A DNA stretch of 64,000 nt. Origin: Octopus sinensis (taxonomy: Eukaryota). The stretch covers positions 20,398,001 to 20,462,000 of the forward strand of contig NC_043016.1 in the NCBI RefSeq assembly GCF_006345805.1, given 5' to 3'. The notes below the pieces were generated by a model. The model did no database searches. It saw nothing but the letters and a program-made list of their open reading frames with translations, and had not been told where the DNA came from. Below, one piece after another: positions 1 through 56,895 of this stretch. The position numbers were made by a program, and so were the translations under genes. Positions within the stretch are counted from its first letter, which is position 1. Each line of letters opens with the position of its first letter.

Positions 1-2481
1 CCTTATCTGCTTCCCTCTCCCATAGCAGTCGCATATCCAAAAGCCTTTACAGGACTGAAAGAAATTGTAATTGTAATCCATGCTGAAACCTGTGCCTGCT
101 TACAGGAAGCTGTTGGACCTGCTACCTTCAGGCAAACTATCATAATGATCTTCTTTTGAGATGCTGAAAACATCCCTCACAACTTCCATCTCAGGCGTCC
201 CTGATTCACAATCTCAGAGCTACTACAATCAACACTAGCACAAGGTAGGTCAGGTGAGATCATTGAAATGCTTGAGCAGAGGTATGTAAATGTGTGCAAT
301 GGAGGAGAACCTCAGTTAGCCTGCTCACCAGCAAGAAGCATAGATACAAGTTCTTCTGAGTGGGCAGCAATGATGGCATAGGTATTCTTTTGGCAGAGGA
401 ATGGATGGATAAGGTGAGTGAGGTAGAAAGGGTGCTTGATAGAATTATTAAGCTAAGATTAGTCCTGGTCACAGAAACGATGAGAGAAAGGTTGCTGGAG
501 TTTTGTGATGTAAATGACTTAATAGTTTGCAACACTAACTTCAGGAAACCTAACTGCCACCTTATCACTTGTCAATCTGATGGGCATACTAGGCAGATTG
601 ACTACATCTTCACCAGAAACAGGGACATGCGGATTTTCATGAATGCAAAGTCTTTCCCAGTTGAAGAATGTACAACTCAACATAGGTTACTGGTTAGCAA
701 TTTCAGACATAGAGATAAAAGCATCCAGTGGCACAAATCAATATGGAAAGGAGATAATGAAAGCTTACAGATCTTGCAAGTTGCTAGAAATTTAGAGATG
801 TCCTTATGAAGCCTTTGATGAGAAGGGGGAAGAGATGGAAATATATGACATAGAGGACAATTAAAAGTTCTTAGGGGACAATCTACTGAGGGTGAAAAAC
901 CAAAGGTGACCTGGTGCTGGAACACTGAGGTCAATAGGGCTATAAAAGAGAAAAGAGGGGTTTGGAAAGAGTGGAAGAGTGGATGTAGCAAAAACAACAT
1001 ATCAGATAGCTATAAGAGAAGCTAGACATCAGCTGTATCTAGCTATGGCAGAAGGAGGAAAGAAGAGGTTTGCCAGTGTCTTACAGCAGGAATATCAGAG
1101 ACTTGAGGTGTTCCAGATTGCTAGGCAGTATGTTAGAGAGAATCAAAATGTTCTGGGAGACAAGTGTGTAAGAACAGATAACAGTATGCTTGCTTTTCGT
1201 GATCCTGAAAAGAAAGAGGAGTGGAGGAGTGGAAGAGCTACCTTGAAAGGCTATTAAATGTGGAGAATGAATGGGAGAAAGAGAATCTCCCTCATATGAA
1301 CCCAACAGCGGGACCAGCTATCCTAGTTGACAGCAGCATGGTAGATAAGGGAATTAAACATATGAAGACAGGGAAGGCCCCTGGTCCATTAAGAGTCACA
1401 GTTGAGATGCCTTAGATACAGTCTAGTCACCTGCATAGTTAGCTAGATTATTCCGGAAGGTATAATCCCAAGTCACTGGCATAGCAGCATCATAGTCAGC
1501 TGCTATAAGGGCAAGGAAGACGCCTTAGCTAGAAGTAATTACAGAGGCATCAAATTGCTGGACCAGGTGGTGAGAGTTGTGATGAGTGTTATAGCCCAGT
1601 TAATTAGGAACAGAATTTGACTAGATGAAATGCAGTTTGGCTTTGTCCAAATAGAAGCACCACTGCAGCAGAAGTTTCACTAAGAATAAGCAGTTGCACT
1701 TGGTATTTGTTGGTCTAAAGAAAGCCTTCCACAGAGTGCCTCACTCTGTGATGTGGTGGTCATTGAGGAAGCTTGAGGTAGACAAGTGGCTTGTTAAAGT
1801 CATACAAGCCATTTACAGAGAGGCTGTTAGTTAGGTAAGAGTTATCCATGGGTACAGTGATGAAATTAGTGTACAGGTAGGTGTTCACTAAGGCTTGCTC
1901 CTCAGCTCTCTTCTATTCATCATCATCCTCCTCCAGGCCATAATCAAGAAATTTAAGACTACAAGCCAAAGGGAACTACTATATGCTCATGATCTGACCC
2001 TTGTAGCAGAAACTGTTTCCACATATGAAATAAATTGCAGGTGTGGAAACAAAACCTGGAATCAAAGTTTTAAAGTTAAGTTAGCAAAGACCAAGGTCCT
2101 AGGAAACAAGAAATTGAACAGGACTCTTCCTCCTTCAGATAAATGGCCCGGCTTGATATATAGGGAGGGTATAGACAGAAATTCCATTTGATGTACCCAG
2201 TGCAAGCTATGGACACACAAGAGGTGCAGTGGAATAGTAGTAGGAAGGTTAACAGAGAAAGTAGTGTTTGTGTATGGAAGATGTACAAGAGCCATAAAGA
2301 CAGCAGATACATGGGAAACTGGTTTCATCAAATGTCCCAGAGTCTCTCTGAAAGTTGTAGATAATTTCTGCTACCTAGGTGACCAAATTAGCAGTGGAGG
2401 AGGTTGTACATAAAATGTAATTGCTAGAGTAAGAAGAGCATGGAGAAAGTTCAGAGAGCTTTTATCTCTGTTGGCAGCCAA

Positions 2482-3251: not shown

Positions 3252-3520
3252 CATGGAAGTGGCTGAGTATTCCACAAGCACAATTATCTATAATGTATTT
3301 CTCAGGGAAAAATTATTATGACTGTGTAACATGTGCACACCTTTTGAATTACAGACACAATCCACATGATGGGCTTCTGAACAGTGTCTGCTTCTGTCTA
3401 TCCTATTTCACTTGCAAGGTATGGACCAACCTGGAGCTAAAGAAAATTATACCTACCCAAGATAACATGCAAACAATATATTTCCTGGCTGCAAAGTAAA
3501 CTTGTAATCTTTCAGCCATA
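3252..3520. mobile_element. Degenerate SINE-like interspersed repeat
   Basis: Begins catggaagtggctgagtattccaca, recalled as a common octopus repeat. Not verifiable within the window. Confidence 0.35.
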
Positions 3521-6259: not shown

Positions 6260-6442
6260 CTCTTCATTATAAAGCTTGCTTATTTCTTGTTTAATAGGAT
6301 CGATAAGTTGAACTTGGCCAGCAGTAAAGCCAACTAACAACAAGACACTCTCACATGATGCTGACTGATGATTGAAGTCATGACAAGTAGGGAATGTTCC
6401 TTTATAAATCCTTTTATCTATTGGTTTGGTCAGGTCTGCTGC
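6260..6442 (-). CDS. WDR20: WDR20 coding exon 2 (183 nt, 61 codons)
   Basis: Read manually: ttcctatttgtag|GCA GCA GAC CTG ... GAA GAG|gtaggt. Translates AADLTKPIDKRIYKGTFPTCHDFNHQSASCESVLLLVGFTAGQVQLIDPIKQEISKLYNEE, the direct continuation of exon 1 in WDR20 proteins. Phase 0 at both ends. Confidence 0.95.
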
Positions 6443-14645: not shown

Positions 14646-15027
14646 TAAATGTAGGGATAAGCAAGTTAGGCAGGTTAAAATATAAAGTATATTAAAACAT
14701 GGAATATAAAAAAATGTATGTATATATGTTTACATACAAAAAGGTCCAACTTACGCAGAATACAAACGATATTCAAGATGGAGATCATCTAATCCTACGA
14801 TGGAATCAATCTACAGACATTATCTATATGGACTACCAAGCCCCCAGAAACAACTGATGGATTTGTAATACATTTCTTCAACCCCTTTAATTCTCTATAT
14901 CATTTGTATTTTGTGTAAGCTGGACCAAAAGGTATGTATGTAAACATATATACCTTTTTAATATTCCATGTTTTTTTTTTATACTTTATATTTTAATCTG
15001 TCTAACTTGCTTATCCTCATATTTACT
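14646..15027. repeat. Diverged inverted repeat (14646-14773 / 14896-15027)
   Basis: gtaaatgtagggataagcaagttag... versus ...ctaacttgcttatcctcatatttac, roughly 80% identical by eye. Confidence 0.7.
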
Positions 15028-15106
15028 TATATACCCACTCAAGTTTAAATCTCTTGAGCACTACAATGTATTCTATATGGAAAATATCTGATTCTCATCT
15101 ATGAAC

Positions 15107-15144
<38 letters not shown>

Positions 15145-15488
15145 ATATATATATCTGTAAAATAATATGTGACAATTATTCAATATCATCCTTTATTTAC
15201 ATAATATTGAGGTCTCTTTCTTTCTTTGTAATCTTACCGTTTTTACCAATATATATACATATATACATACATATATACATATATATATACATATATACAT
15301 ACATATATATATATACATATAAATATACATATATATATACACATATATATATACATATATATATACATATATATATATACATATATATACATATATATAT
15401 ACATATATATATATACATATATATACATATATTGGTGAATTGAAGAAATGGAGCTGAACGCAGATTGAACAGAAATCGTTTTATTTCA

Positions 15489-15568
15489 TTCTACACGTGT
15501 TTCGAAAGGCACAAATTACCAAAATCCGATTGAATAATGGGACCATATTGTGTCTTTCTCTTCAGGAA
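15489..15568 (-). ncRNA. Minimal type I hammerhead ribozyme motif in the 3' pLTR
   Basis: uuc CUGAAGA gaaag-acaca...ugug-c-cuuuc GAAA cacgug UA gaa: intact core, stem II and palindromic stem-III/loop ACACGUGU. Predicted cleavage between 15492 and 15491. Confidence 0.8.
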
Positions 15569-18500
15569 GAAAAAAGGAAATCCGTTGGAAAAACAAAAAC
15601 AGAACAGAGGCAGAGCAAAAAACAAATCGAACTGTGCTCCTAAGAGCCCATGGCGAAACTGTTTATCAGTTATGTTGAGAACCGGTGGCTGAGAATTCAA
15701 CGGGTCAGGCATCGGTCAATCGTGTGGGTGAGGGTGTATAGATGTTCTTTGTGACCGAGAATAAAGTTCTGACTATTTAAAGAATATTGGATTGTTTATA
15801 AGGGGCGAGAAAAAATCTATAGAGACGTGTGTGTGTGTATACTGTTCTATATATGTGTGTGTTGGCGTAGGGGTAGAAAACATTTTTTGTGTACGTGTGT
15901 GCGTTTGATCGTTCGGCTGTCAGTGGCTACTGCCGTGATAGCCGTTGGGTGGCAGAAAGAAAAAAAATAAAGAAATTATATATATATTATGTTTTATGTG
16001 TGTGTGTGTTCATCTAAGCCTGCCTTGACAAGGAAACCCCCCGCTGTGAAAAAACAAGCCCCGTTTGTCTTACAGGAGTAATTTCCCTTGCAGTGGTTAA
16101 TTGTAGATATCTTAAAAGCTATTTCAGAATTTGTTACCAAGGGCTATGGGTGCCGGTCTTATTTATAAACGCTATTTAAAGGCCAGATAAGTGTAACGCC
16201 GCCAATGGGGGCATCGAAAAGCCGACTGTAAGAGCCCGTTTACCATCCGGCCTCTGGCAACAAAATATGGAAGAGTTCGGAGACACAAAGGTTGCACTGT
16301 CTTCTGCCCCTATCAAATGGGAGGGCACCGACAAAATTGACCATTCCAGCCTATAGCTTAAGTTCGCATCCTTCAGTCGCCATATTAGCTTACTGAGTCC
16401 CGTGGTCTGGCGCTTGTTCACGTCCCGAAAAGTTGCGTAATGGTTGGAGACACGCAAAGACAATCTTGAGGATGATGCCCCTATATAAGTGAAGGCATCT
16501 GAGTCCGTGTAAACCTTGCATTGGTAGACGGCGTTTTTGATCTTGGAGTTCGCCGACGTGAATCTTACTCTGCCAGGATTGGTTTCTGAAATTAGAACTG
16601 CGTTCCTGTCACTATATTCGTTCCGAGACCTGCAGCCGCTTACTACTCTATTTTCCACTACGTCACTATTAACTATAGGAATAACCCCTGATTCTCCACT
16701 ATCTATCAGAGTGCTGTCATTGCTACTGCCCGTGGTACTGCTATTGCGGGAAATGATGCTGGGGATGCTAAGGGGCTCTCTACCCTACTCCCATTGTTAC
16801 CATCAACCACAACACCCCTATTTATAACTATACCCCTAGTGGGTACTCCCTGGCTGGAGCTGAGATTATGTGTCACTGTACTGGCTCTCATATCATTATT
16901 ACTACTATAATTATTCCTACTGAGCATTAAACCGGGAGCGGAAGAGGCTGTGCCTCCGGAAAAGGTGATAGGGTCTTAGTAAGTAGCCTATTATTATGGG
17001 AGGCGATTATCTGGGCGAGGTTTTTAGTGTTGGAGAAGCTAGCTATCCTAACTTATGTGAGTTAACCGTGGAGTAATATTTGGAATTTTGGGGAAGTTAT
17101 TGGCGATGGCTTGTCTAAACATGAGGGGGAGGTTAGTTCTAATCTGCTTACCAAAGGGGATTACAAACCATATATGCTTATTCCTATCAGTGTGATGGGT
17201 CGGGACGCCAGCTCTCGCATTTGGGTGGGTGATTCTCGGATGAATAACGGGTCTTGGGTTAGTGTAAGACCTCCCGGACCGATAATTATCCTTGTTCGCT
17301 AAATTAAATGCGGGAGCGACTACCCCGGTATCCGCCGCGCTCCCGTCCTTACTTAAAATGTTAATGTTATTATATACGGCCCTATCCTGATGACCGAATG
17401 ATGGCATCGGAAGGGCCGGATCAATATAAATTACCTTCTGCCTATAACCGGCCTTGGATAGTGCGGCGTTATAAAAATCCGTTTTCTGCATAAAAATATC
17501 GGCACTGGCGGACAAGCCAGACAATCTTAGAGAGATGTTTTTAACCAAATTGTCTGTTACGGTTTTGGCATGATTTGAGAAGACACTGACATACTTCAAA
17601 TTAGTGGAAGGCTTATGGTAAGGGCAGTATGAGTCGCTATTAAGGTTAAGTGTAACGTCTAGGAAATTAGCCTTGGTGAGTTCATTATCAAAAACTATAC
17701 TCATGCCCATTCTATTAAAAAACCTAGCTAACCTGCTCTTAGTTTTCTGCACTATTCTGTTCGTGGTGTTTTGCAGGTAAAAAGACAATCGTCACGATAC
17801 AGGCCGCCCGCGATCTCCGGGAATTGATCGGACAATTCGTAGAGAATATATATTCCGACCAAATCGGCTATCTGCGCACTATCCGAACTACCCATAGGCA
17901 CATCAAATTCATTGGGAGTATCCTTACGGATCCACAGCTTATTATCAAACTTAATAAACGATTTCCTGGCAACTAAAATGATATCTATCTCTTCTCTGGT
18001 GAGGCCTGCCTTGTTGTGTGAGCATGCCAGAGGGCCTTATTTAGCACACTAGGGTTAATCGAGGGGTAGAAGCTGGCGATATCAAACTGAATGAACCTAG
18101 TACGGTTCTTATTGGGGATGGAGAGAACCACTTCACTACCTGCGAGGAGTTGGCCCAGAGGCTGAGCTTCAGCTTGTTACTAAACTAGGGATATATTTAT
18201 CTAAAATGTACTTACTGATTATCCCGATATCAGATCTAGCAGGGCATATGAGTCTTAGCGCTGGGTTGGTGTGGAAGTTAGGTTTATGGTCCTTCACTAT
18301 AAATCTGGGTTGCTGGGGCTAAGCGGCTGAGTTTCATTTGAATTCGGTTGTTTAAATATTATATCCTTAATTTCCAAGTTTACCTTCCTCAGGGTACTCC
18401 AATTGGTTTTTTATAACTTTTCTTGATCTCTTTACCGAGTAAATCTAGGTACTGCTTAATGGGCATCTTGTATGTGTTCCTGGTCTTGTCGGACTGGACC

Positions 18501-19112
18501 AGGACTCCGTCCGTTCTATTAATGTCCTGGTAATTTTATCTAGGTATCTGAGGTGGGCATTTCTCCTGGGTGACTTCCTGACTTAATCTTTCTAACTATG
18601 TCCCACAAGTCGTCCTCAGACTTCTTCAGTCTTGGGTTCGGTGGCGGCGTATCCAATGTTTTAAAAAGCCGGCCGTATTCGGACGATGCAGTTGTCCGGT
18701 TCGATTTTAGATCTTCGTTCTCGTGGAAGAAAATGAGCCATCTTATCCGGTTTATGAATGCGTTGGTTTTACAAACCAACTCCTTAAGGAAGGCATCCTT
18801 TGGTGGTATAGAAAATCCTTAAGGGACGCATCAATCTCGAACAACTCCATTATTGGCGTCGGTTAAAGTAGCAGTTTCTTGACGAAGCGGTATGTATTAT
18901 GTGAAATAGAAAGATGAATAATCTTGTAGTAGATTAATCAAAAGTTTAACCGATACCTTAGTAGCAAAAATCACAGCAGTGAACAGCACGGTTGGAGGTA
19001 CAACCATCTGGCGTTGCAACCGTGCGTTGGTGCGGATAATTGAAATTAAACATTATTGGTGAATTGAAGAAATGGAGCTGAACGCAGATTGAACAGAAAT
19101 CGTTTTATTTCA

Positions 19113-19190
19113 TTCTACACGTGTTCGAAGGCACAAATTACCAAAATCCGATTGAATAATGGGACCATATTGTGTCTTTCTCTTCAGGAA
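19113..19190 (-). ncRNA. Hammerhead motif in the 5' pLTR (one A of GAAA missing as assembled)
   Basis: Identical to 15489-15568 except for two single-base homopolymer deletions. Confidence 0.7.
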
Positions 19191-19824
19191 GAAAAAAGGA
19201 AATCCGTTGGAAAAACAAAACACGTGTAGAATGAAATAAAACGATTCTGTCAATCTGCGTTCAGCTCCATTCTTCAATTCACCAATAATGTTTTAATTTC
19301 AATTATCCGCACCAACGCATGGTTGCAACGCCAGATGGTTGTACCTCCAACCGTGCTGTTCACTGCTGTGATTTTTGCTACTAAGGTATCGGGTTAAACT
19401 TTTGATTAATCTACTACAAGATTATTCATCTTTATTTCACATAATATATAACATATATATATATATACATATATATACATATATACATACATATTACACA
19501 TATATATATACATATTACATATATATATACATATATACATTATATATATACATATATATATACATAATAAATACATATATACTATATATATACATATATA
19601 TATACATAATACATATATATATACATATATTATTACATATATATATACATATAATACATATATATATACATATATACATACATATATACAACATATATTA
19701 CATATATTTATACATATATATACATATATATATACATATATATATATCATATACACATATATATATACATATACACATATATATATACATATATACATAT
19801 ATATATACATATATATGTATATGC

Positions 19825-19995
19825 AGTTCAGCAAAAGAGACCGATAGAATAAGTACTAGGCTTACAAAGAATAAGTCCTGAGGTTGATTTGCTTGACTAA
19901 AGCCTGTGCTCCAGCGTGGCCACAGTCAAATGACTGAAAAAGTAAAAGAGTATGTATATATATATATATATACTCTTTTACTTGTTTCAGTCATA
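19825..19995 (+). mobile_element. SINE 3' portion (…ctccagcgtggccacagtcaaatgactgaaa…aaaaga) plus an inverted stub
   Basis: The same family occurs at 12809-12863 and 53345-53420 in the opposite orientation. Confidence 0.65.
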
Positions 19996-23270: not shown

Positions 23271-23519
23271 CTTCCTTACACCCTTGTAAATATAGAAGTA
23301 AAGCTCCCTTCCAACATTGAAACATATTCGATCAGGATACCCAGAAGCATCGTTAACATTGATGAAGGAGACTTTAACGGGCGCATTTGCTTGTCCATTG
23401 TATGCTGCCCTCGTTGGTCTCGAATATTCAGACAAATGCATTTGTTTATATATTCCTTCCCGAGTGCCAAACTGGCTTTTTATATCATCTTTTCCTCCAC
23501 CCTCACTCTGAGCCGCCAT
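23271..23519 (-). CDS. WDR20: WD repeat-containing protein 20 (WDR20/DMWD family), coding exon 1 (83 codons)
   Basis: Translates MAAQSEGGGKDDIKSQFGTREGIYKQMHLSEYSRPTRAAYNGQANAPVKVSFINVNDASGYPDRICFNVGRELYFYIYKGVRK, matching the WDR20 N-terminus (TREG, SEYSRP, CFNVGRELYFYIYKGVRK). Ends at AAG|GTAAGT, a phase-0 donor. The ORF-track tail VSVPNISILFFSHY is intron read-through. Confidence 0.95.
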
Positions 23520-23625
23520 GTTTGGTCTATGCTAAGATGACAGGTACCCGATATCGTATCATTGCGCAAAATCTAAGTGTCGCTTCCGATTCCAAGTTAA
23601 ACCAATACACGTGTTCGAAGTAGTT
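23520..23625 (-). promoter_or_regulatory. Candidate WDR20 5' UTR / proximal promoter
   Basis: CpG-retaining unique sequence directly upstream of the ATG (context ccaaacATGG), containing CACGTG, CCAAT, TTGCGCAA and CGGAAG words. TSS not determinable. Confidence 0.3.
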
Positions 23626-29426: not shown

Positions 29427-30830
29427 TCATCATCATCATTGTTTAACGTCTGTTTTCCATGAGGACTGGCAAACCAGATGGCTGCACCAGGCTCCAATCT
29501 GATCTGGCAGAGTTTCTACAGCTGGATGCCCTTCCTAATGCCAACCACTCCGAGAGTGTAGTGGGTGCTTTTACATGCCACCGGCACGAGGGCTAGTACT
29601 GGCAACAGCCACGCTCAAATGGTGTTTTTTACATGCCACCTGCACAGGAGCCAGTCCAGCAGCACTAGCAACGACCTCACTCAAATGTTTTTTCACGTGC
29701 CACAGGCACAAGTGCTAGTAAGGCGGCGCTGGTAACAATCATGCTCGAATGGTGCATTTTACATGCCACCAGCACAGAAGCCAGTCAGCTGCTCTGGCAA
29801 CGATCATGCTCAGATGGTGCTCTTAGTGCTCCACTGGCACAGGTGCCAATCATCAAATTTGATTCGATTTTGATTTCACTTGCCTTAACAAGTATTCGCA
29901 AGCAGAGTTTAGTGTCCAATGAAGGAAAGGTACATATAAGTGGGCTGGTTACACCCCTGGCATAGGTCATGGTTTATTGTCTCACTTGGCTTGCCAGGTC
30001 CTCTCATGCACTGCATATTTCCGAAGGTCTCAGTCACTAGTCATTACCTCAGTGAGGCCTAATGTTCGAAGTGTAGTGGGTGCTTTTACATGCCTGGGAA
30101 GGCTTTGGCATTTATAAGCAGCCATCTTTCCCTTTTTCTGGCGAGGTTGCAGTCAATTTGGCTAGTGTGTCTGCCAGAACGGTAGGTGACTAGGTGACTG
30201 GCAGGTTTCCTGAAGTTAGTATTGCAAACCATAAGATCATTTGTGTCGCGGAACTCCAGCAGCCTGGTTCCTTCCTCATTGCGGGAACCAAAACTGTAGC
30301 CTCCATGTACGCCATGGAAGCCCTCTGTATGTTGTCCAACATGTCCATTGAAATCACCAGCCACAAAGAGAAGGTCCCTGTCATTCATCAACAATGTAGT
30401 CTGCAAGAGAGTTTCATAAAATCGGTCTTTCTGTCCATCAGGTAGCCCTGGCTGAGGGGCATAGGCCAAGATAATGGTTGCTAACCCATGATGAAGCACT
30501 AATCTAATCTTAAGTATTCTGTCACATACTCTGACTACCTCGATTACCTTATCCACCCATTTCTCCGCAAGAATTATACCCATGCCCCCTGACCCTGTCA
30601 GTGTTCCCTGCCCAGAAAATCTTGTACCTGTGTTCTTTACTTATGAGGAACCTAGCGGAACGCAGCACATATTGACACATATCCATTCAAGCATTTCAAG
30701 AATCTCACCAGACCTACCTTTCAGAGTGTCAACGTTGAGAGTACCAACCCCGATGGTGTTGGCCCGTGAGACCCTTGGACAGGGGACAGCAGCATCATGT
30801 ACCTGAAAAGAAAGCTCACATTTGGCAGAA
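29427..30830 (-). mobile_element. RTE LINE with the RT deleted: endonuclease joined to the 3' UTR/(GAT)n tail
   Basis: ORFs 30641-30892 and 30086-30583 (GTLNVDTLKGRSGEI, AYAPQ, AGDFNGHVG, NEEGTRLLEF, NTNFRK), followed directly by the 3' UTR at 29427-30070. Confidence 0.85.
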
Positions 30831-36649: not shown

Positions 36650-38200
36650 GAATACACTCAATTATTCACTACTCCATGAGTGTAGAATCATGTCATAGGC
36701 TTTCTTATAATCTATCCATGCTATTGTTAAATTTTTCTTTCTAGATTTCACTTTCTTTAGAACTGCTTTGTCTAATGTACAATAGATCATGTGTTCCTCT
36801 AACCTTCTTCCTGCATCCCTTTGTTCTTTTGGAAATAAATTTTGGCTGTCAAGGTGCTCATAAATGTTTTCTGAAAGCCTTCCTGTTAACAGCTTCCTCA
36901 CTAACGGTAAGCAAGTGATTGGTCTATAATTACTAGCTATATTGCCATTGCTTTTGTCTTTCATAGGGAGTTGTGTTCTCTCTCTAGTCATCCAATTAGG
37001 TATGACTCCTCCATTAAGGTAATCTTGAAGTTGTTCCCTCAGTCTCCCATGTAACATACTAAATTTCTTTAACCAACACCCTTGAACTAAATCTGGTCCT
37101 CAGCCCTTCCATTTTGGCATTCTTCCTTACACTTAATGCACCAGCTAGTTTTAGATCTGGCTACTTCTTACTGACTACTTCTTCCCTCACTTTCTTTAGC
37201 TATGTTACACTTCCATTATGATTCTAAATATCACTCCAGAATTTTCTAGCTTTTTCTGCATTAGGCTTCTCATCTTCTACACTATTTATTTGGCAATAAA
37301 ATCTCCTCCAGTCTGTTTCAAACAATTCGTCCTGTTGATACTGATCTATTCTTTTTTGATATTTGAAAAGCTTACCTGCTATTACTACAAGACACATTTT
37401 CAGCTCATCTGTGACTGTCCCAAATCCTTTCTCTTTGACTAGATATTTTTTGTCAAGAAAAGATTTTAATCTTGTGTTTCCTAACTTGTCCTGCTCTATT
37501 CTAGCCAGATATTGTCTTAAAGTCTTCTCTTCATTTTCTAATTTCCTTTTCCACATCTACTCCTTCCTATTCTTTTCTTGAAGAATACCTATTCTTCTAG
37601 TAACTACTATTCCTCCTGCATAAATCAATAAGTTAGTGTCACATATATTTTTAGCTTCAATCCCACTGATAAGAGAATCTACTTGCCTTGTAATATCTAG
37701 CAACTTCCTTCTATTACCAGCCTTTTTAGCTGGTAATCTTTTCTTTCTTCTTTACTTATTACTTTCTGCAACTCATCTGAACTCTCCTGATCTTCCTCAT
37801 TTAAATCACTGGTGTCAATTTTTCCTTCCTGGTTGGTAGTGCTTGTGTTTTTTTCTTGTTGGCTCTTCATTGGCTTGGACTATATCACTTATACATCTTG
37901 CTTTTTCTTGGTTTGTGTTCTTTAACTGTTTGACTTTTTGATCCTTTTTAATTGTCTTGGGATATCTTCTATCTACAGTTCTGTCATCTACTTATTTCTC
38001 TTAACAGTATTAGACTGGTCCACCAGTCTTTTCTCTGTTATATCAAACATGCTTTTCTTTAACCAAAGTGCTAATATACGTTTTTTTTGGTACCACTTTG
38101 AGTTCACTTTCAAAGTAGCATTGAATCACTACCCTGTCCTCTTCTCTTGTCCATTTCATCCACATTACTCTATTATGTACTGCTGCTTAGAATTTGTTCT
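36650..38200 (-). mobile_element. R4/Dong-like element copy B: N-terminal region and first RT motifs
   Basis: ORFs 37224-37556 and 36662-37057 (SNYRPITCLPL.RKLLTG, KKNLTIAWIDYKKAYDMI.HSW). Confidence 0.85.
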
Positions 38201-43559: not shown

Positions 43560-45420
43560 TCAATATACCATTGGCTATTATTATGTCTCAGTCTTAGAGC
43601 TTGTACTGAGTTTTTGCCCAAGCACTAAGAATTTCAACAAGAATAAACTAGCTCAAGGACTATTTCAGTTTGTCCTTTGTCACAAGAAAAAATGCAACGA
43701 GGAGTCAGAAAACCCTATGTTTACTAAAAATAAAAATGATGATGATTGAATCTGGCATAATTGAATTGAAAAGAATCCCAATTGGTTTCCAGATAAAGTT
43801 AGGGATGGACGTTCACAAGCACTACTGGAATTTCTTGAATCTTGTCAGGCAGGCATTAGAGAAAGCCTTAAAACAAGTGGAAAGAAGTCCTGGTATAACC
43901 TCACAAATTCCCAATCTTACGCACTCCAACATAATAATGATTCTATTGTTATTAAGATGGCAGATAAGGGAAGTGCTATCATAATAAAGGACAAAAGTTG
44001 AGTATATTTCAGCTTGTGAAGAAGTTTTAAATGACAAAACTTCATATGAAGAATTACCTGTCGATCCAAACCCCAATTACAGAGAAGAACTTGACAAAAT
44101 AATTCTGGAAATGGAGGAAGACAATTTCGTTAATAAGGCTAAATCTAAGATTTTAAGGTCAGAAAGAACACCTGTATTTTATGGTCTCCTTAAAATACAC
44201 AAAAAGTTTGCAAGATTTCCTCCAATGCGCCCAATTTGCAGCAGATATGAATGCTGCATAGCCAACATTTTGGAATGGCTGGATGGCTTTCTAATCCCTG
44301 TTGCAAAACGATCAAGTTCCTATATTCGGGATACATTTGATTTTGTATCTAAAATCAACAACTTTTTTAACCACCGAGGCTGTATTAAGAACTGTTTTTT
44401 GGTAACTATGGATGTTTCTTCCTTATACCCCAATATTGACCACAATGAAGGGGTAGAGGCATGCATGGATGCCTTCGAAAAACAGTCAAACAAAAGTATT
44501 CCATCAAATTTTCTCTGTAGATTATTGAGGTTTGTGTTAGAAAATAACACAATGAAGTTTAGACAAAGATTTTACCACCAGGTGAAGGATTGCACCATGG
44601 GTACCCCCGCATGACAGTTAATTTTGAAAATATCTTCATGACGAAATTCAAAACACAGTTACTGAAGACATTCAAATCCCTTCATGGGACCTCTATATCT
44701 GACTCCAAGAAAACGAACATTGGAGTATCTGCATGCTGTACCTTAAAGAACAGCTGTTTATTGTGCAACATGAGTGAAGTGAATTCCATCAGAAATCATA
44801 ACAGAAATGTTATGATTTATACAGAAGGTGGAACATGTAAAGATTCCCAGTTGGTGTGTGCTGCAGAATACATGAAACACAATTTATGTTGGTTGTACAA
44901 CAGAACAATTAAACAAAAGGTTTAATGGGCACAGATTCAATGTCAGGCACAACAACAGTAGTTTGACAGAACTTGCTGAACATTTGGTTTCAAGCAGCTG
45001 CAATTTTGAAGAAGACTTGAAAGTGCATATTCTCAGAAAATATTCTGAATCTGCTTCACTTTCACTTCTCAGAATGCACGAGGAGAAATATGTTTGTGAG
45101 TTATTAACATCACACCCTGGAGGAATGAATAAGATGACAGGAGAATATCATCAAATTTATACAAAACTGTTTGATTAAATATTCTTCTTTCTCTCTTTTT
45201 CTTTCCTTTTTTTGTTGTTTTCTTTTTTCTGTTTTTTTCTTTTGCGTGTTATAAAATTGTAACTTAAAAACTGCTGATGTATTCCATCAACGTGTGGACA
45301 CTGGTTGCTCTCATTCATACTTTACATTTAAATTTCTATAATTTTGAATTTTTATCACTTCTTATTTTGAACTTGACGAAGACAGACTTTCTGTTGAAAT
45401 ATCATTCAATCTATAAAATC
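43560..45420 (+). mobile_element. Penelope-like element (Cys-rich linker type), internally deleted
   Basis: LSFCP, IVIKMADKGSA, FYGLLKIHK, LVTMDVSSLYPNIDH, MGTP; motif C and thumb missing. Then CCTLKNSCLLC, GGTCKDSQL, RFNGHR, HPGGMN. HHR-like TTGACGA...GAAA at ~45373-45399. Confidence 0.85.
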
Positions 45421-56760: not shown

Positions 56761-56895
56761 TCCATACAACTGTTTCAGCCTATGGTTAAAAGTAGTTTTT
56801 AAAATTTTTTTTGCCTATAGTTGTCAATTATATTGAGGTTATAGGCATTTAAAAATAAGGTGCTTATATATATAACCATAGGCCTCGTCAGAGAT
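56761..56895 (-). ncRNA. Hammerhead-like motif with an 11 bp stem II
   Basis: CUGACGA g-gccuaugguua...uaaccauaggc-u GAAA caguug UA; stem I is poor. Confidence 0.45.

What the first reader, a model, noticed from the sequence alone, without database searches (positions are those of the whole stretch)
15489..19190. Matched hammerhead pair in the sense strand of WDR20 pre-mRNA
Seen: the PLE and both of its HHRs are on the minus strand, as is WDR20, inside intron 1 and 3.6 kb apart. Both carry the self-complementary ACACGUGU needed for dimer formation. Known: minimal PLE hammerheads are proposed to act as dimers, and intronic ribozymes exist in host genes (HDV-like in CPEB3, hammerhead in RECK). 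Inference: every WDR20 transcript from this allele could form an intramolecular HHR dimer and be cut before intron 1 is spliced. That would tune WDR20 dose and release a PLE-length RNA without a PLE promoter, i.e. host-transcription-driven mobilisation.
Basis: partly seen in the sequence, partly recalled or inferred. Interest (0 to 1): 0.7.

Follow-up and report, generated by a model that had tools for sequence, protein, structure and literature searches.

The report
Retrotransposon hammerhead pair in WDR20 intron
The two hammerhead-ribozyme motifs are real, but they are the ordinary terminal-repeat ribozymes of a decayed Penelope-like retrotransposon in the first coding intron of a cephalopod WDR20 gene, and as assembled they are badly placed to cut the host transcript.

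Summary
On the minus strand, two near-identical hammerhead (HHR) motifs lie 3,624 nt apart (cut sites 15492|15491 and 19116|19115). They flank a Penelope-like element (PLE) in sense orientation inside the 16.8-kb intron between WDR20 coding exons 1 (23519-23271) and 2 (6442-6260). Both carry ACACGUGU.

The pair is not special to WDR20. Direct HHR pairs flanking the ORF, an inverted 5' arm and TA-rich microsatellite ends recur in three related PLE loci that I fetched, and PLE terminal-repeat HHR pairs acting as dimers were described in 2014.

The functional inference is not supported, for five reasons.
- In a dimer each core cuts the other copy's site.
- The 5' core reads GAA, not GAAA, and has lost one helix II base.
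- The 5' cut site is buried in a roughly 230-bp hairpin with the inverted arm (-24.7 versus -11.6 kcal/mol for the ribozyme pairings).
- The PLE reading frame is broken about 22 times.
- Published PLE hammerheads are slow and protein-assisted, and slow intronic ribozymes do not disturb splicing.

Copies made in one insertion event differ mostly by single-base indels, so some defects may be assembly errors. Verdict: a new member of a known kind, of low interest.

The parts
19449..19830 (.). TA-rich (TATATACA)n microsatellite on the upstream side of the insertion (upstream as read on the minus strand)
   Evidence: the repeat finder families D1-D3; sequence read
19229..19448 (-). Inverted 5' arm. 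It is the reverse complement of 18895-19120 and ends in a third ACACGUGU (19228-19221).
   Evidence: Inverted repeats I1 and I18. Alignment with the direct segment shows 1-2 substitutions and 6 internal indel events. It pairs along its whole length in the minimum-energy fold.
19054..19220 (-). Upstream terminal repeat (a partial upstream copy of the element's 3' end) carrying the 5' hammerhead copy
   Evidence: Direct repeats D4 and D5 are 100% identical to 15430-15598 apart from two single-base indels
19108..19194 (-). 5' hammerhead copy: helix I 5' strand 19194-19188, CUGAAGA 19187-19181, helix II 19180-19127 (3' strand one U short), GAA 19126-19124 (one A short of GAAA), ACACGUGU 19124-19117, A17 at 19116, helix I 3' strand 19115-19108. 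An AAUAAA follows at 19109-19104.
   Evidence: It fails the hammerhead descriptor because of GAA. Positions 19126 to 18895 are paired with the inverted arm.
16945..18809 (-). Reverse-transcriptase region of the PLE, fragmented over three frames. Motifs FDIASFYPSI, PMGSSDS and YRDD are visible.
   Evidence: Three-frame translation. tblastn with the intact Octopus sinensis relative gives HSPs in frames -1, -2 and -3 with many in-frame stops. There are about 22 frame-changing indels relative to L001 across the reverse-transcriptase and endonuclease regions together.
16175..16628 (-). GIY-YIG endonuclease region (VYQC...YIGASS...CNLCxSE), split over three frames
   Evidence: tblastn with the L001 161-aa ORF, 67% identity, three frames. 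The L001 ORF gives a weak Pfam GIY-YIG hit, E 0.08. Homologue P0073 is named 'predicted GIY-YIG superfamily endonuclease'.
15484..15572 (-). 3' hammerhead copy with a complete core: helix I 15572-15566 with 15491-15484 (U15488 bulged), CUGAAGA 15565-15559, helix II 15558-15504, GAA 15503-15501, ACACGUGU 15500-15493, A17 at 15492, cut 15492|15491
   Evidence: It is the only descriptor hit in the window, against 0.02 expected. Rfam Hammerhead_1 scores 14.8 bits over the full model length. Pairs are listed.
15480..15485 (-). AAUAAA inside the helix I 3' strand, 7 nt after the cut site and about 50 nt before the element's end. It is probably the element's polyadenylation signal.
   Evidence: Sequence. 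The same arrangement occurs in L001, L002 and L016.
15430..15483 (-). 3' tail of the element. The insertion ends at 15430.
   Evidence: Direct repeat D5 ends at 15430, where the microsatellite begins
15217..15429 (.). TA-rich microsatellite on the downstream side of the insertion
   Evidence: the repeat finder D1 and D2
23271..23519 (-). WDR20 first coding exon (ATG at 23519, GTAAGT donor from 23270)
   Evidence: tblastn E 1e-29; sequence and frame; named homologues
6260..6442 (-). WDR20 second coding exon (AG acceptor before 6442, GTAGGT donor after 6260)
   Evidence: tblastn E 8e-27; sequence

Best explanation
This is one ordinary insertion of a Penelope-like retrotransposon (PLE) with a C-terminal GIY-YIG endonuclease. 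It targets TA-rich microsatellites and belongs to a cephalopod family.

Read on the minus strand, the layout is: microsatellite, inverted 5' arm, partial upstream copy (the 5' terminal repeat), a 3,624-nt unit ending in the 3' terminal repeat, microsatellite. It landed in sense orientation in the 16.8-kb first coding intron of WDR20.

The two hammerheads are the element's own terminal-repeat ribozymes. They are type I, with a weak A/U-rich helix I, a long helix II and a very short helix III. The 8-nt self-complementary ACACGUGU of helix III allows an extended intermolecular helix III.

Their likely role, which is inferred, is in the element's own RNA processing, assisted by its protein. This copy can no longer make that protein.

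In the WDR20 pre-mRNA the 5' motif sits in the apical loop of a roughly 230-bp hairpin. Its palindrome, cut site and helix I 3' strand are paired with the inverted arm. As assembled, its core also lacks one A of GAAA. The 3' motif therefore has no free, competent partner in cis. It should cleave rarely, if at all, during the minutes before exon 2 (9 kb downstream) is transcribed.

The expected effect of the ribozymes on WDR20 is none or small.

Shown here: the anatomy, the PLE homology, the conservation of the layout, the covariation, the predicted hairpin and the broken frame. Inferred: low activity and no effect on the host gene.
For: - Anatomy and repeats.
- The hammerhead core and all three helices are present in the 3' copy. 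It is the only hit in 64 kb, against 0.02 expected.
- Rfam Hammerhead_1 gives a full-length but sub-threshold alignment.
- PLE identity: the best protein match is from Octopus sinensis at 71% identity. The L001 relative has an intact 667-aa reverse-transcriptase ORF and a 161-aa GIY-YIG ORF. There are 408 homologues, most of those listed about 700 aa long.
- The same layout recurs elsewhere. Direct hammerhead pairs lie 3,217, 2,538 and 2,452 nt apart around the ORF in L002 (Argonauta hians), L015 and L016. L002 and L015 also have an inverted third copy. All three end in TA microsatellite.
- Covariation over five divergent motifs: 86% of cells are paired against 64% in shuffles (0 of 500 shuffles reach this). 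Ten of 16 pairs show changes on both sides. Helix I, which was not used to select the motifs, is 80% paired and 5 of its 7 pairs covary.
- Against the octopus relative, helix II shows C-G to U-A and A-U to G-C changes, and the palindrome changes from ACACGUGU to ACAUAUGU.
- The hairpin has a minimum free energy of -397 kcal/mol and sequesters 19126 to 18895.
- The 5' substrate strand paired with the inverted arm gives -24.7 kcal/mol, against -11.6 for helix III plus helix I.
- The active monomer fold of the 3' copy is 4.9 kcal/mol above its minimum-energy fold.
- The frame is broken.
- Literature: PLE terminal-repeat HHR pairs, proposed dimers and low in-vitro activity (PMC4209133, PMC6765202). 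A protein-assisted PLE HHR with no RNA-seq ends at the cut site, and cleavage not needed for insertion in vitro (PMC11167929). Slow intronic ribozymes leave splicing intact while fast ones do not (PMC2995048, PMC10919898). In Xenopus, 44% of HHR-bearing retrozymes overlap introns (bioRxiv 10.64898/2026.07.22.740005).
Against: - No activity data exist for this family, and thermodynamic folding ignores co-transcriptional kinetics, helicases, ADAR editing and tertiary contacts.
- The GAA core and the broken frame may be assembly artefacts. Segments copied in one insertion event differ by 8 indel events, 7 of them in homopolymer runs, against 1-2 substitutions.
- The minimum-energy homodimer does form the intermolecular ACACGUGU helix, so pairing in trans with other family transcripts is possible.
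- Retrozymes are mildly depleted from introns in Xenopus. This hints that intragenic hammerheads can carry a cost.
- The CPEB3 ribozyme shows that an intronic ribozyme can lower its host's mRNA (PMC10919898).
Confidence: 0.72

Rival explanations
1. The two copies pair within each WDR20 pre-mRNA through ACACGUGU and form a double hammerhead. They cut the intron before splicing, lower WDR20 output and release a unit-length PLE RNA driven by the host promoter.
For: - Both motifs are on the sense strand of the intron.
- The 8-bp self-duplex is worth -10.3 kcal/mol.
- The 3' core is complete.
- If GAA is an assembly error, the 5' core would be complete too, and it lies in the hairpin's loop.
- Tandem HHR dimers are the published model for PLE RNA processing (PMC4209133, PMC6765202).
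- An intronic ribozyme lowers CPEB3 expression (PMC10919898).
Against: - As assembled, the core that would serve the 15492 site is defective.
- The 19116 site and the 5' palindrome are paired with the inverted arm, which is more than 13 kcal/mol better than the hammerhead pairings.
- The copies are 3.6 kb apart, so pairing is a long-range contact.
- PLE min-HHRs are slow even as dimers and need protein (PMC4209133, PMC11167929), and this copy encodes none.
- Slow intronic ribozymes do not affect splicing (PMC2995048).
Confidence: 0.06
2. The insertion does affect WDR20, but not through the ribozymes. Either the sense-strand AAUAAA in each terminal repeat causes some premature cleavage and polyadenylation, or the roughly 230-bp intronic dsRNA hairpin attracts ADAR editing, small-RNA production or silencing.
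For: - AAUAAA at 19109-19104 and 15485-15480 lies on the sense strand. The same position relative to the cut site is conserved in L001, L002 and L016.
- The near-perfect hairpin has a minimum free energy of -397 kcal/mol.
- It is general knowledge that sense-oriented transposable elements can supply polyadenylation sites, and that long dsRNA is an ADAR or Dicer substrate.
Against: AAUAAA is common in this AT-rich intron. No downstream GU-rich element or expression data were examined. Most intronic polyadenylation signals are suppressed. Nothing was tested directly.
Confidence: 0.12
3. The 3' hammerhead is cut occasionally in trans. Its palindrome pairs with transcripts of other copies of the same PLE family, helped by protein from intact copies. 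The intronic copy is then a passive substrate.
For: - The minimum-energy homodimer forms the intermolecular helix III.
- The PLE HHR studied in vitro is protein-assisted (PMC11167929).
- The O. sinensis relative (L001) retains long open reading frames.
Against: No other copy of this family lies in the window. Copy number and expression are unknown. Bimolecular pairing in the nucleus needs high concentrations.
Confidence: 0.07
4. The motifs are not ribozymes. They are chance matches to a loose consensus inside a repeated sequence.
For: Rfam finds nothing at gathering thresholds. The fold energy of the motif is not unusual (z = -0.5). Helix I is weak (-1.3 kcal/mol).
Against: - Expected hits per window are 0.02.
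- The motif sits where PLE hammerheads are known to sit.
- Four other PLE families show the same architecture with different sequence and compensatory changes.
Confidence: 0.03

Closest known systems
Minimal type I hammerheads in the terminal repeats of Penelope-like elements (Cervera and de la Pena 2014, PMC4209133; Lunse et al. 2017, cited through PMC6765202)
   Same: There is one hammerhead in each terminal repeat, about 3 kb apart around a reverse-transcriptase/GIY-YIG ORF. The core is CUGANGA...GAAA with G10.1-C11.1. Helix III is tiny with a palindromic insert, implying dimers. Helix I is weak. Some copies lie on opposite strands a few hundred bases apart.
   Different: Helix II carries an insert of about 31 nt beyond a 5+5-bp stem (55 nt in all), against 6-8 bp in the published consensus. 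That is why Rfam models and standard descriptors score it low. The palindrome is 8 nt. An AAUAAA lies inside the helix I 3' strand.
Hydra clade of PLEs with a C-terminal endonuclease (Craig et al. 2021, PMC8557442)
   Same: Aquatic invertebrate hosts, including molluscs. A single ORF with a C-terminal GIY-YIG endonuclease. Insertion into (TA)n. Canonical hammerheads universally present. Complex tandem and inverted insertions.
   Different: The unit here is 3.6 kb, against less than 3 kb. The endonuclease appears to keep a CxxC...H...H pattern, which Hydra is reported to lack. No phylogeny was made, so clade membership is open.
Conserved intronic ribozymes of host genes (HDV-like in CPEB3, PMC10919898; hammerheads HH9 and HH10 in RECK and other genes)
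   Same: A self-cleaving motif on the sense strand of an intron, upstream of the next exon by a distance comparable to the CPEB3 case (9 kb here, about 10 kb there).
   Different: Those are single, monomer-active motifs conserved at orthologous positions across species and no longer part of a recognisable transposable element. This one is a dimer-type motif inside a recognisable PLE copy. It gives no Rfam HH9 or HH10 hit, and there is no evidence of orthologous conservation.
Double hammerheads of newt satellite and avocado sunblotch viroid RNAs, and animal non-LTR retrozymes (Forster et al. 1988, cited through PMC4209133; PMC7229834)
   Same: A weak helix III is rescued by pairing two copies, and cleavage yields unit-length RNA.
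   Different: Those copies are 170-400 nt apart in tandem arrays. Here they are 3.6 kb apart, and one is locked in a hairpin.

Membership tests
Hammerhead ribozyme, type I (PLE minimal variant) | Conserved core CUGANGA ... GAAA, with C3 and G8 | tested here: met
   The 3' copy has CUGAAGA at 15565-15559 and GAAA at 15503-15500. The 5' copy does not meet this: it reads GAA at 19126-19124.
Hammerhead ribozyme, type I (PLE minimal variant) | Three helices around the core, with G10.1-C11.1 closing helix II and a UH cleavage site | tested here: met
   In the 3' copy, helix II has 10 pairs starting with G-C, helix I has 7 pairs with one bulge, and the site is GUA|. The 5' copy's helix II 3' strand is one U short.
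Hammerhead ribozyme, type I (PLE minimal variant) | Short helix III with a palindromic sequence that permits a dimer | tested here: met
   ACACGUGU is present in both copies. The self-duplex is worth -10.3 kcal/mol and forms in the minimum-energy homodimer.
Hammerhead ribozyme, type I (PLE minimal variant) | Reaches the Rfam gathering score for a hammerhead family | tested here: not met
   Hammerhead_1 scores 14.8 bits against a gathering score of 34, and appears only in a 171-nt search. There are no hits. The cause is the long helix II insert and the weak helix I.
Hammerhead ribozyme, type I (PLE minimal variant) | Base pairs supported by covariation among relatives | tested here: met
   Five divergent PLE motifs were compared. 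86% of cells are paired against 64% in shuffles, and 10 of 16 pairs change on both sides. Caveat: helices II and III were part of the selection descriptor, so only helix I is an unbiased test.
Hammerhead ribozyme, type I (PLE minimal variant) | Site-specific self-cleavage | not testable with these tools
   This needs in-vitro transcription or RNA end mapping.
Penelope-like element | A single ORF with a reverse transcriptase followed by a GIY-YIG endonuclease | tested here: met
   Reverse-transcriptase motifs and GIY-YIG/CNLC motifs are visible. The region is collinear with the L001 ORFs. Homologues are about 700 aa, and one is named a GIY-YIG endonuclease. The Pfam hits themselves are weak: GIY-YIG E 0.08, and no RVT_1 hit on L001.
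Penelope-like element | Terminal repeats from a partial upstream copy, often with an inverted 5' arm | tested here: met
   The same layout occurs in L002, L015 and L016.
Penelope-like element | Intact ORF (an autonomous copy) | tested here: not met
   The frame changes about 22 times and there are many stops. Some of this may be assembly error.
Hydra clade of PLEs | Insertion into (TA)n, hammerhead present, unit under 3 kb, endonuclease without the internal CCHH motif, placement in the reverse-transcriptase tree | tested here: inconclusive
   A TA-rich microsatellite target and a hammerhead are present. The unit is 3.6 kb, and the endonuclease shows a CNLC...H...H pattern. No phylogeny was made.
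Conserved intronic host-gene ribozyme (CPEB3, RECK type) | Conservation at the orthologous intron position in other species | tested here: inconclusive
   Contigs from another cephalopod align only over exon 1 and its upstream 100 nt. The intron could not be compared.
Conserved intronic host-gene ribozyme (CPEB3, RECK type) | Active as a single, stable monomer motif | tested here: not met
   The monomer helix III is 2 bp with a 4-nt loop. The active fold is 4.9 kcal/mol above the minimum-energy fold. There is no HH9 or HH10 hit.

The most novel reading that the evidence does not exclude
If the GAA core and the helix II gap are assembly errors, and the hairpin is opened in vivo (for example by helicases or ADAR editing), the two sense-strand hammerheads could pair across 3.6 kb. 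They would then cut a measurable share of WDR20 pre-mRNA. That would give a ribozyme-set ceiling on host expression and a unit-length PLE RNA made from the host promoter.
Probability: 0.05. Interest if true: 0.65.

Novelty: new member of a known kind. Interest (0 to 1): 0.2.

Why it matters
As it stands this is routine repeat annotation. It adds a cephalopod PLE family whose hammerhead has an unusually long helix II, an 8-nt palindromic helix III and a polyadenylation signal built into helix I. Rfam models miss this variant.

Two practical points follow. First, hammerhead searches in mollusc genomes should allow long helix II inserts. Second, indel-dominated differences between segments copied in a single event are a warning that repeats in this assembly may be poorly polished.

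The finding would only bear on how transposon ribozymes interact with host pre-mRNA processing if cleavage of the host transcript were shown.

Tried and rejected
- Rfam at gathering thresholds gave no hits on the window. E-value scans of 15000-19600 and of seven related loci returned only low-complexity microRNA-like matches over the TA repeats, which are artefacts.
- Pfam on the window's ORF fragments and on homologues gave nothing significant.
- My first strict descriptor missed the relatives, because it required perfect palindromes and a strict helix II. A version tolerant of wobble pairs recovered them (then 71).
- I tried to find the orthologous empty site. The WDR20 exon-1 contigs L004-L009 come from a more distant cephalopod and align only over the exon and 5' region. 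Presence or absence of the insertion in relatives remains unknown, and the species of the window was not identified.
- The short metagenome and Logan contigs L003 and L010-L014 hold the ORF, but my descriptor scans found no convincing hammerhead in them.
- Lunse et al. 2017 is not held in the library, so I cite it through a review.
- I considered whether the 15-mer shared with the WDR20 5' region means a fourth hammerhead piece. I rejected this: there is no core around it, and it lies in a promoter/5'UTR block conserved in another species.
Full report
**1. What is in the sequence**

Read on the minus strand, the region between 19830 and 15217 is a single insertion bracketed by (TATATACA)n-type microsatellite. 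Its parts, in order, are:
- an inverted arm, 19448-19229, which is the reverse complement of 18895-19120 (inverted repeats I1 and I18)
- a partial upstream copy from about 19220 to 19054
- a 3,624-nt unit running from 19053 to 15430

The last roughly 170 nt of the unit (15598-15430) repeat the partial upstream copy. Two blocks are 100% identical, separated by two single-base indels. No other copy of this family is present in the window.

**2. The hammerheads**

The 3' repeat contains a complete type I hammerhead:
- helix I: UUUCUUC (15572-15566) with GAA(U)GAAA (15491-15484)
- core CUGAAGA: 15565-15559
- helix II: opens with G-C and runs 5 bp, an A.C mismatch, then 5 bp, with an inner domain of about 31 nt (15558-15504)
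- GAA: 15503-15501
- self-complementary ACACGUGU: 15500-15493

The 5' repeat carries the same motif (CUGAAGA 19187-19181, ACACGUGU 19124-19117, would-be cut 19116|19115). It has two differences: CCUUC for CCUUUC in the helix II 3' strand, and GAAC for GAAAC. One A of the invariant GAAA is therefore missing.

A descriptor scan of both strands of the window finds only the 3' copy, against 0.02 hits per shuffled window. Rfam Hammerhead_1 aligns over its full length but scores 14.8 bits (gathering score 34). It pays for a 51-nt insertion in helix II and gets little from helix I. At gathering thresholds nothing is reported.

**3. The element is a Penelope-like retrotransposon**

The three-frame translation shows reverse-transcriptase motifs (FDIASFYPSI, PMGSSDS, YRDD). 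Downstream lies a GIY-YIG endonuclease with the CNLCxSE motif.

The closest protein is from Octopus sinensis (71% identity, mis-named 'myb-like'). Its locus L001 holds a relative that is 76% identical in DNA, with an intact 667-aa reverse-transcriptase ORF and a 161-aa endonuclease ORF.

A search with that ORF returns 408 homologues. Most of those listed are about 700 aa, one is named a GIY-YIG endonuclease, and one comes from Argonauta hians.

The window's copy is broken. Homology runs through all three frames, with many stops and about 22 frame-changing indels relative to L001, mostly single-base deletions.

**4. The matched pair is the family's normal layout**

| Locus | Hammerhead positions | Spacing | Other features |
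|---|---|---|---|
| L002 (Argonauta hians) | 4661 and 7878, identical motifs | 3,217 nt around the ORF | third copy inverted at 1936; TA-rich repeat at the 3' end |
| L015 | 3801 and 6339 | 2,538 nt | inverted copy at 3468; (TA)n beside it |
| L016 | 3814 and 6266 | 2,452 nt | ends in (TA)n |

Each motif has CUGACGA, a helix II of 12 to 62 nt, GAAA, an 8-10 nt self-complementary stretch beginning with A and ending with U, and then H. The self-complementary stretches are ACAAUUGU, ACUCAGAGU and ACAGCGUUGU.

In four of the five families an AAUAAA lies 3-7 nt after the cut site, inside the helix I 3' strand. It probably serves as the element's polyadenylation signal.

I built a fixed-register alignment of the five divergent motifs. 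In it, 86% of cells pair against 64% in shuffles (0 of 500 shuffles reach this). Ten of 16 pairs change on both sides. Sliding the partners by one to three columns drops pairing to 36-53%.

Helices II and III were part of my selection rule, so they are biased. Helix I was not, and it is 80% paired, with 5 of its 7 pairs covarying.

Against the octopus relative alone, helix II shows C-G to U-A and A-U to G-C changes, and the palindrome changes from ACACGUGU to ACAUAUGU while staying self-complementary. That copy also keeps GAAA, which makes the 5' copy's GAA the derived state.

All of this matches published descriptions. PLE terminal repeats carry minimal hammerheads about 3 kb apart, sometimes also on opposite strands a few hundred bases apart. 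Variants with a small palindromic helix III are known, and they are proposed to act as dimers (PMC4209133, PMC6765202).

The TA-microsatellite target, C-terminal endonuclease, aquatic invertebrate host and universal hammerhead resemble the Hydra clade (PMC8557442). However, the unit is longer than reported for Hydra, the endonuclease seems to keep a CCHH-like pattern, and I made no tree.

**5. The host gene**

The translations of 23519-23271 and 6442-6260 (minus strand) match proteins named WD repeat-containing protein 20 from many animals, down to E 2e-68.
- The first exon starts at an ATG and ends at a GTAAGT donor.
- The second begins after an AG acceptor.
- Human residues 3-85 and 84-144 abut, so no coding exon is missing between them.

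The insertion therefore lies in sense orientation in the 16,828-nt first coding intron. It sits 4.2 kb after the donor and 9.0 kb before the acceptor.

**6. Why the proposed cleavage is unlikely here**

*Topology.* A hammerhead junction has three strands:
- 2.x-CUGANGA-10.x
- 11.x-GAAA-15.x
- 16.x-H-1.x

When helix III forms between two copies, the third strand comes from the partner. Each core then cuts the other copy's site. This follows from the connectivity of the motif and is the double hammerhead of Forster et al. 1988, which I know of through PMC4209133.

The site at 15492 would therefore be served by the 5' core, which as assembled lacks an A of GAAA and a helix II base. The site at 19116 would be served by the intact 3' core.

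*The hairpin.* RNAfold of 19450-18890 gives a near-perfect hairpin of about 230 bp (-397 kcal/mol). In it, the 5' copy's GAA, palindrome, cut site and whole helix I 3' strand (19126 to 18895) pair with the inverted arm (19218 to 19448). Only the 5' core and helix II remain free, in the apical loop.

| Pairing of the 5' copy's 17-nt substrate strand | 37 C (kcal/mol) | 15 C (kcal/mol) |
|---|---|---|
| With the inverted arm | -24.7 | -33.5 |
| Helix III plus helix I of a composite hammerhead | -11.6 | -18.0 |

The pre-mRNA thus carries three ACACGUGU copies within the insertion. The two that are about 100 nt apart satisfy each other, which leaves the 3' copy without a partner in cis.

*The 3' copy alone.* Its active monomer fold is 4.9 kcal/mol above its minimum-energy fold, in which the pyrimidine-rich helix I strand pairs with the GAAGAG of the core.

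*Published activity.*
- PLE min-HHRs showed no activity as monomers and low activity as dimers (PMC4209133).
- The Anolis PLE hammerhead showed no cleavage without the element's protein, was dispensable for insertion in vitro, and left no RNA-seq ends at its site (PMC11167929). This copy encodes no protein.
- A hammerhead cutting an intron co-transcriptionally left splicing efficiency unchanged, and only fast ribozymes abort processing (Dye 2006 and Fong 2009, as reported in PMC2995048 and PMC10919898).

*How common this is.* Hammerhead-bearing repeats in introns are common. In Xenopus, 44% of retrozymes overlap introns, although they are mildly depleted there (bioRxiv 10.64898/2026.07.22.740005).

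**7. A caveat about the assembly**

The two terminal repeats, and the inverted arm with its direct counterpart, were presumably copied in one insertion event. They now differ by 8 indel events, 7 of them in homopolymer runs, but by only 1-2 substitutions, one of which is at a CpG. Natural decay normally shows the reverse ratio, and the two WDR20 exons are clean.

Residual long-read errors in a repeat that short reads cannot polish are a plausible cause. If so, the GAA, the helix II gap and part of the frame damage would be artefacts. That would restore the 5' core but not free the 5' substrate strand from the hairpin.

**8. Verdict**

The identification as a PLE hammerhead pair in the sense strand of WDR20 is right. 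The regulatory and mobilisation inference is unsupported, and for this copy it is structurally disfavoured.

The most likely account is an ordinary, decayed PLE insertion whose ribozymes have no meaningful role for the host gene (confidence about 0.72). If the insertion affects WDR20 at all, conventional routes are at least as likely as ribozyme cleavage. Those routes are the sense AAUAAA signals and the long intronic dsRNA.

The hammerhead variant itself (long helix II, 8-nt palindrome, polyadenylation signal in helix I) is a new member of a known kind.

Noticed in passing
window 56765-56891 (-): A second, solitary hammerhead-like motif: CUGACGA, an 11-bp helix II closed by G.U around an insert of about 106 nt, GAAA, self-complementary ACAGUUGU, then A. 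Helix I is poor (2 of 7 pairs). It may be a relic of another PLE or retrozyme family. It lies upstream of WDR20 on the same strand.
   Followed up: partly
window 23606-23620 (-) and 19116-19130 (-): The 15-mer CTTCGAACACGTGTA of the 5' hammerhead also occurs about 90 nt upstream of the WDR20 ATG (0 matches expected by chance). From CGAACACGTGTA down to the ATG, that upstream block is about 97% conserved in another cephalopod (L004). It is probably a conserved E-box or 5'UTR element and the match a coincidence.
   Followed up: partly
window 18895-19448 (-): The inverted arm and its partner would form a near-perfect dsRNA of about 230 bp inside the WDR20 intron. This is a candidate substrate for A-to-I editing or small-RNA production in a cephalopod. 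No expression data were available.
   Followed up: partly
window 15430-19448: Segments copied in one insertion event differ by 8 indel events (7 in homopolymer runs) against 1-2 substitutions. The ORF shows mostly 1-nt deletions relative to its relative, while the exons are clean. The pattern suggests unpolished long-read errors in repeats.
   Followed up: partly
window 15480-15485 and 19104-19109 (-); L001 8249-8254; L002 after 7970; L016 after 6310: AAUAAA sits 3-7 nt after the hammerhead cut site, inside the helix I 3' strand, in four of five PLE families examined. Formation of helix I and recognition of the polyadenylation signal could therefore compete.
   Followed up: partly
window 44111-44925 (+): ORFs of a different PLE-like reverse transcriptase (KIHK...PMRPI...SLYPNI). 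The Pfam RVT_1 hit is weak (E 0.015). No hammerhead was found near it with my descriptors.
   Followed up: partly
window 360-809 (+), 30086-30583 (-), 36662-37057 (-): Fragments that, judged by eye from their translations, look like LINE-type endonuclease and reverse-transcriptase ORFs. The window is rich in transposable elements and in TA/CA microsatellites, which produce spurious sub-threshold mir-297-like Rfam matches.
   Followed up: no
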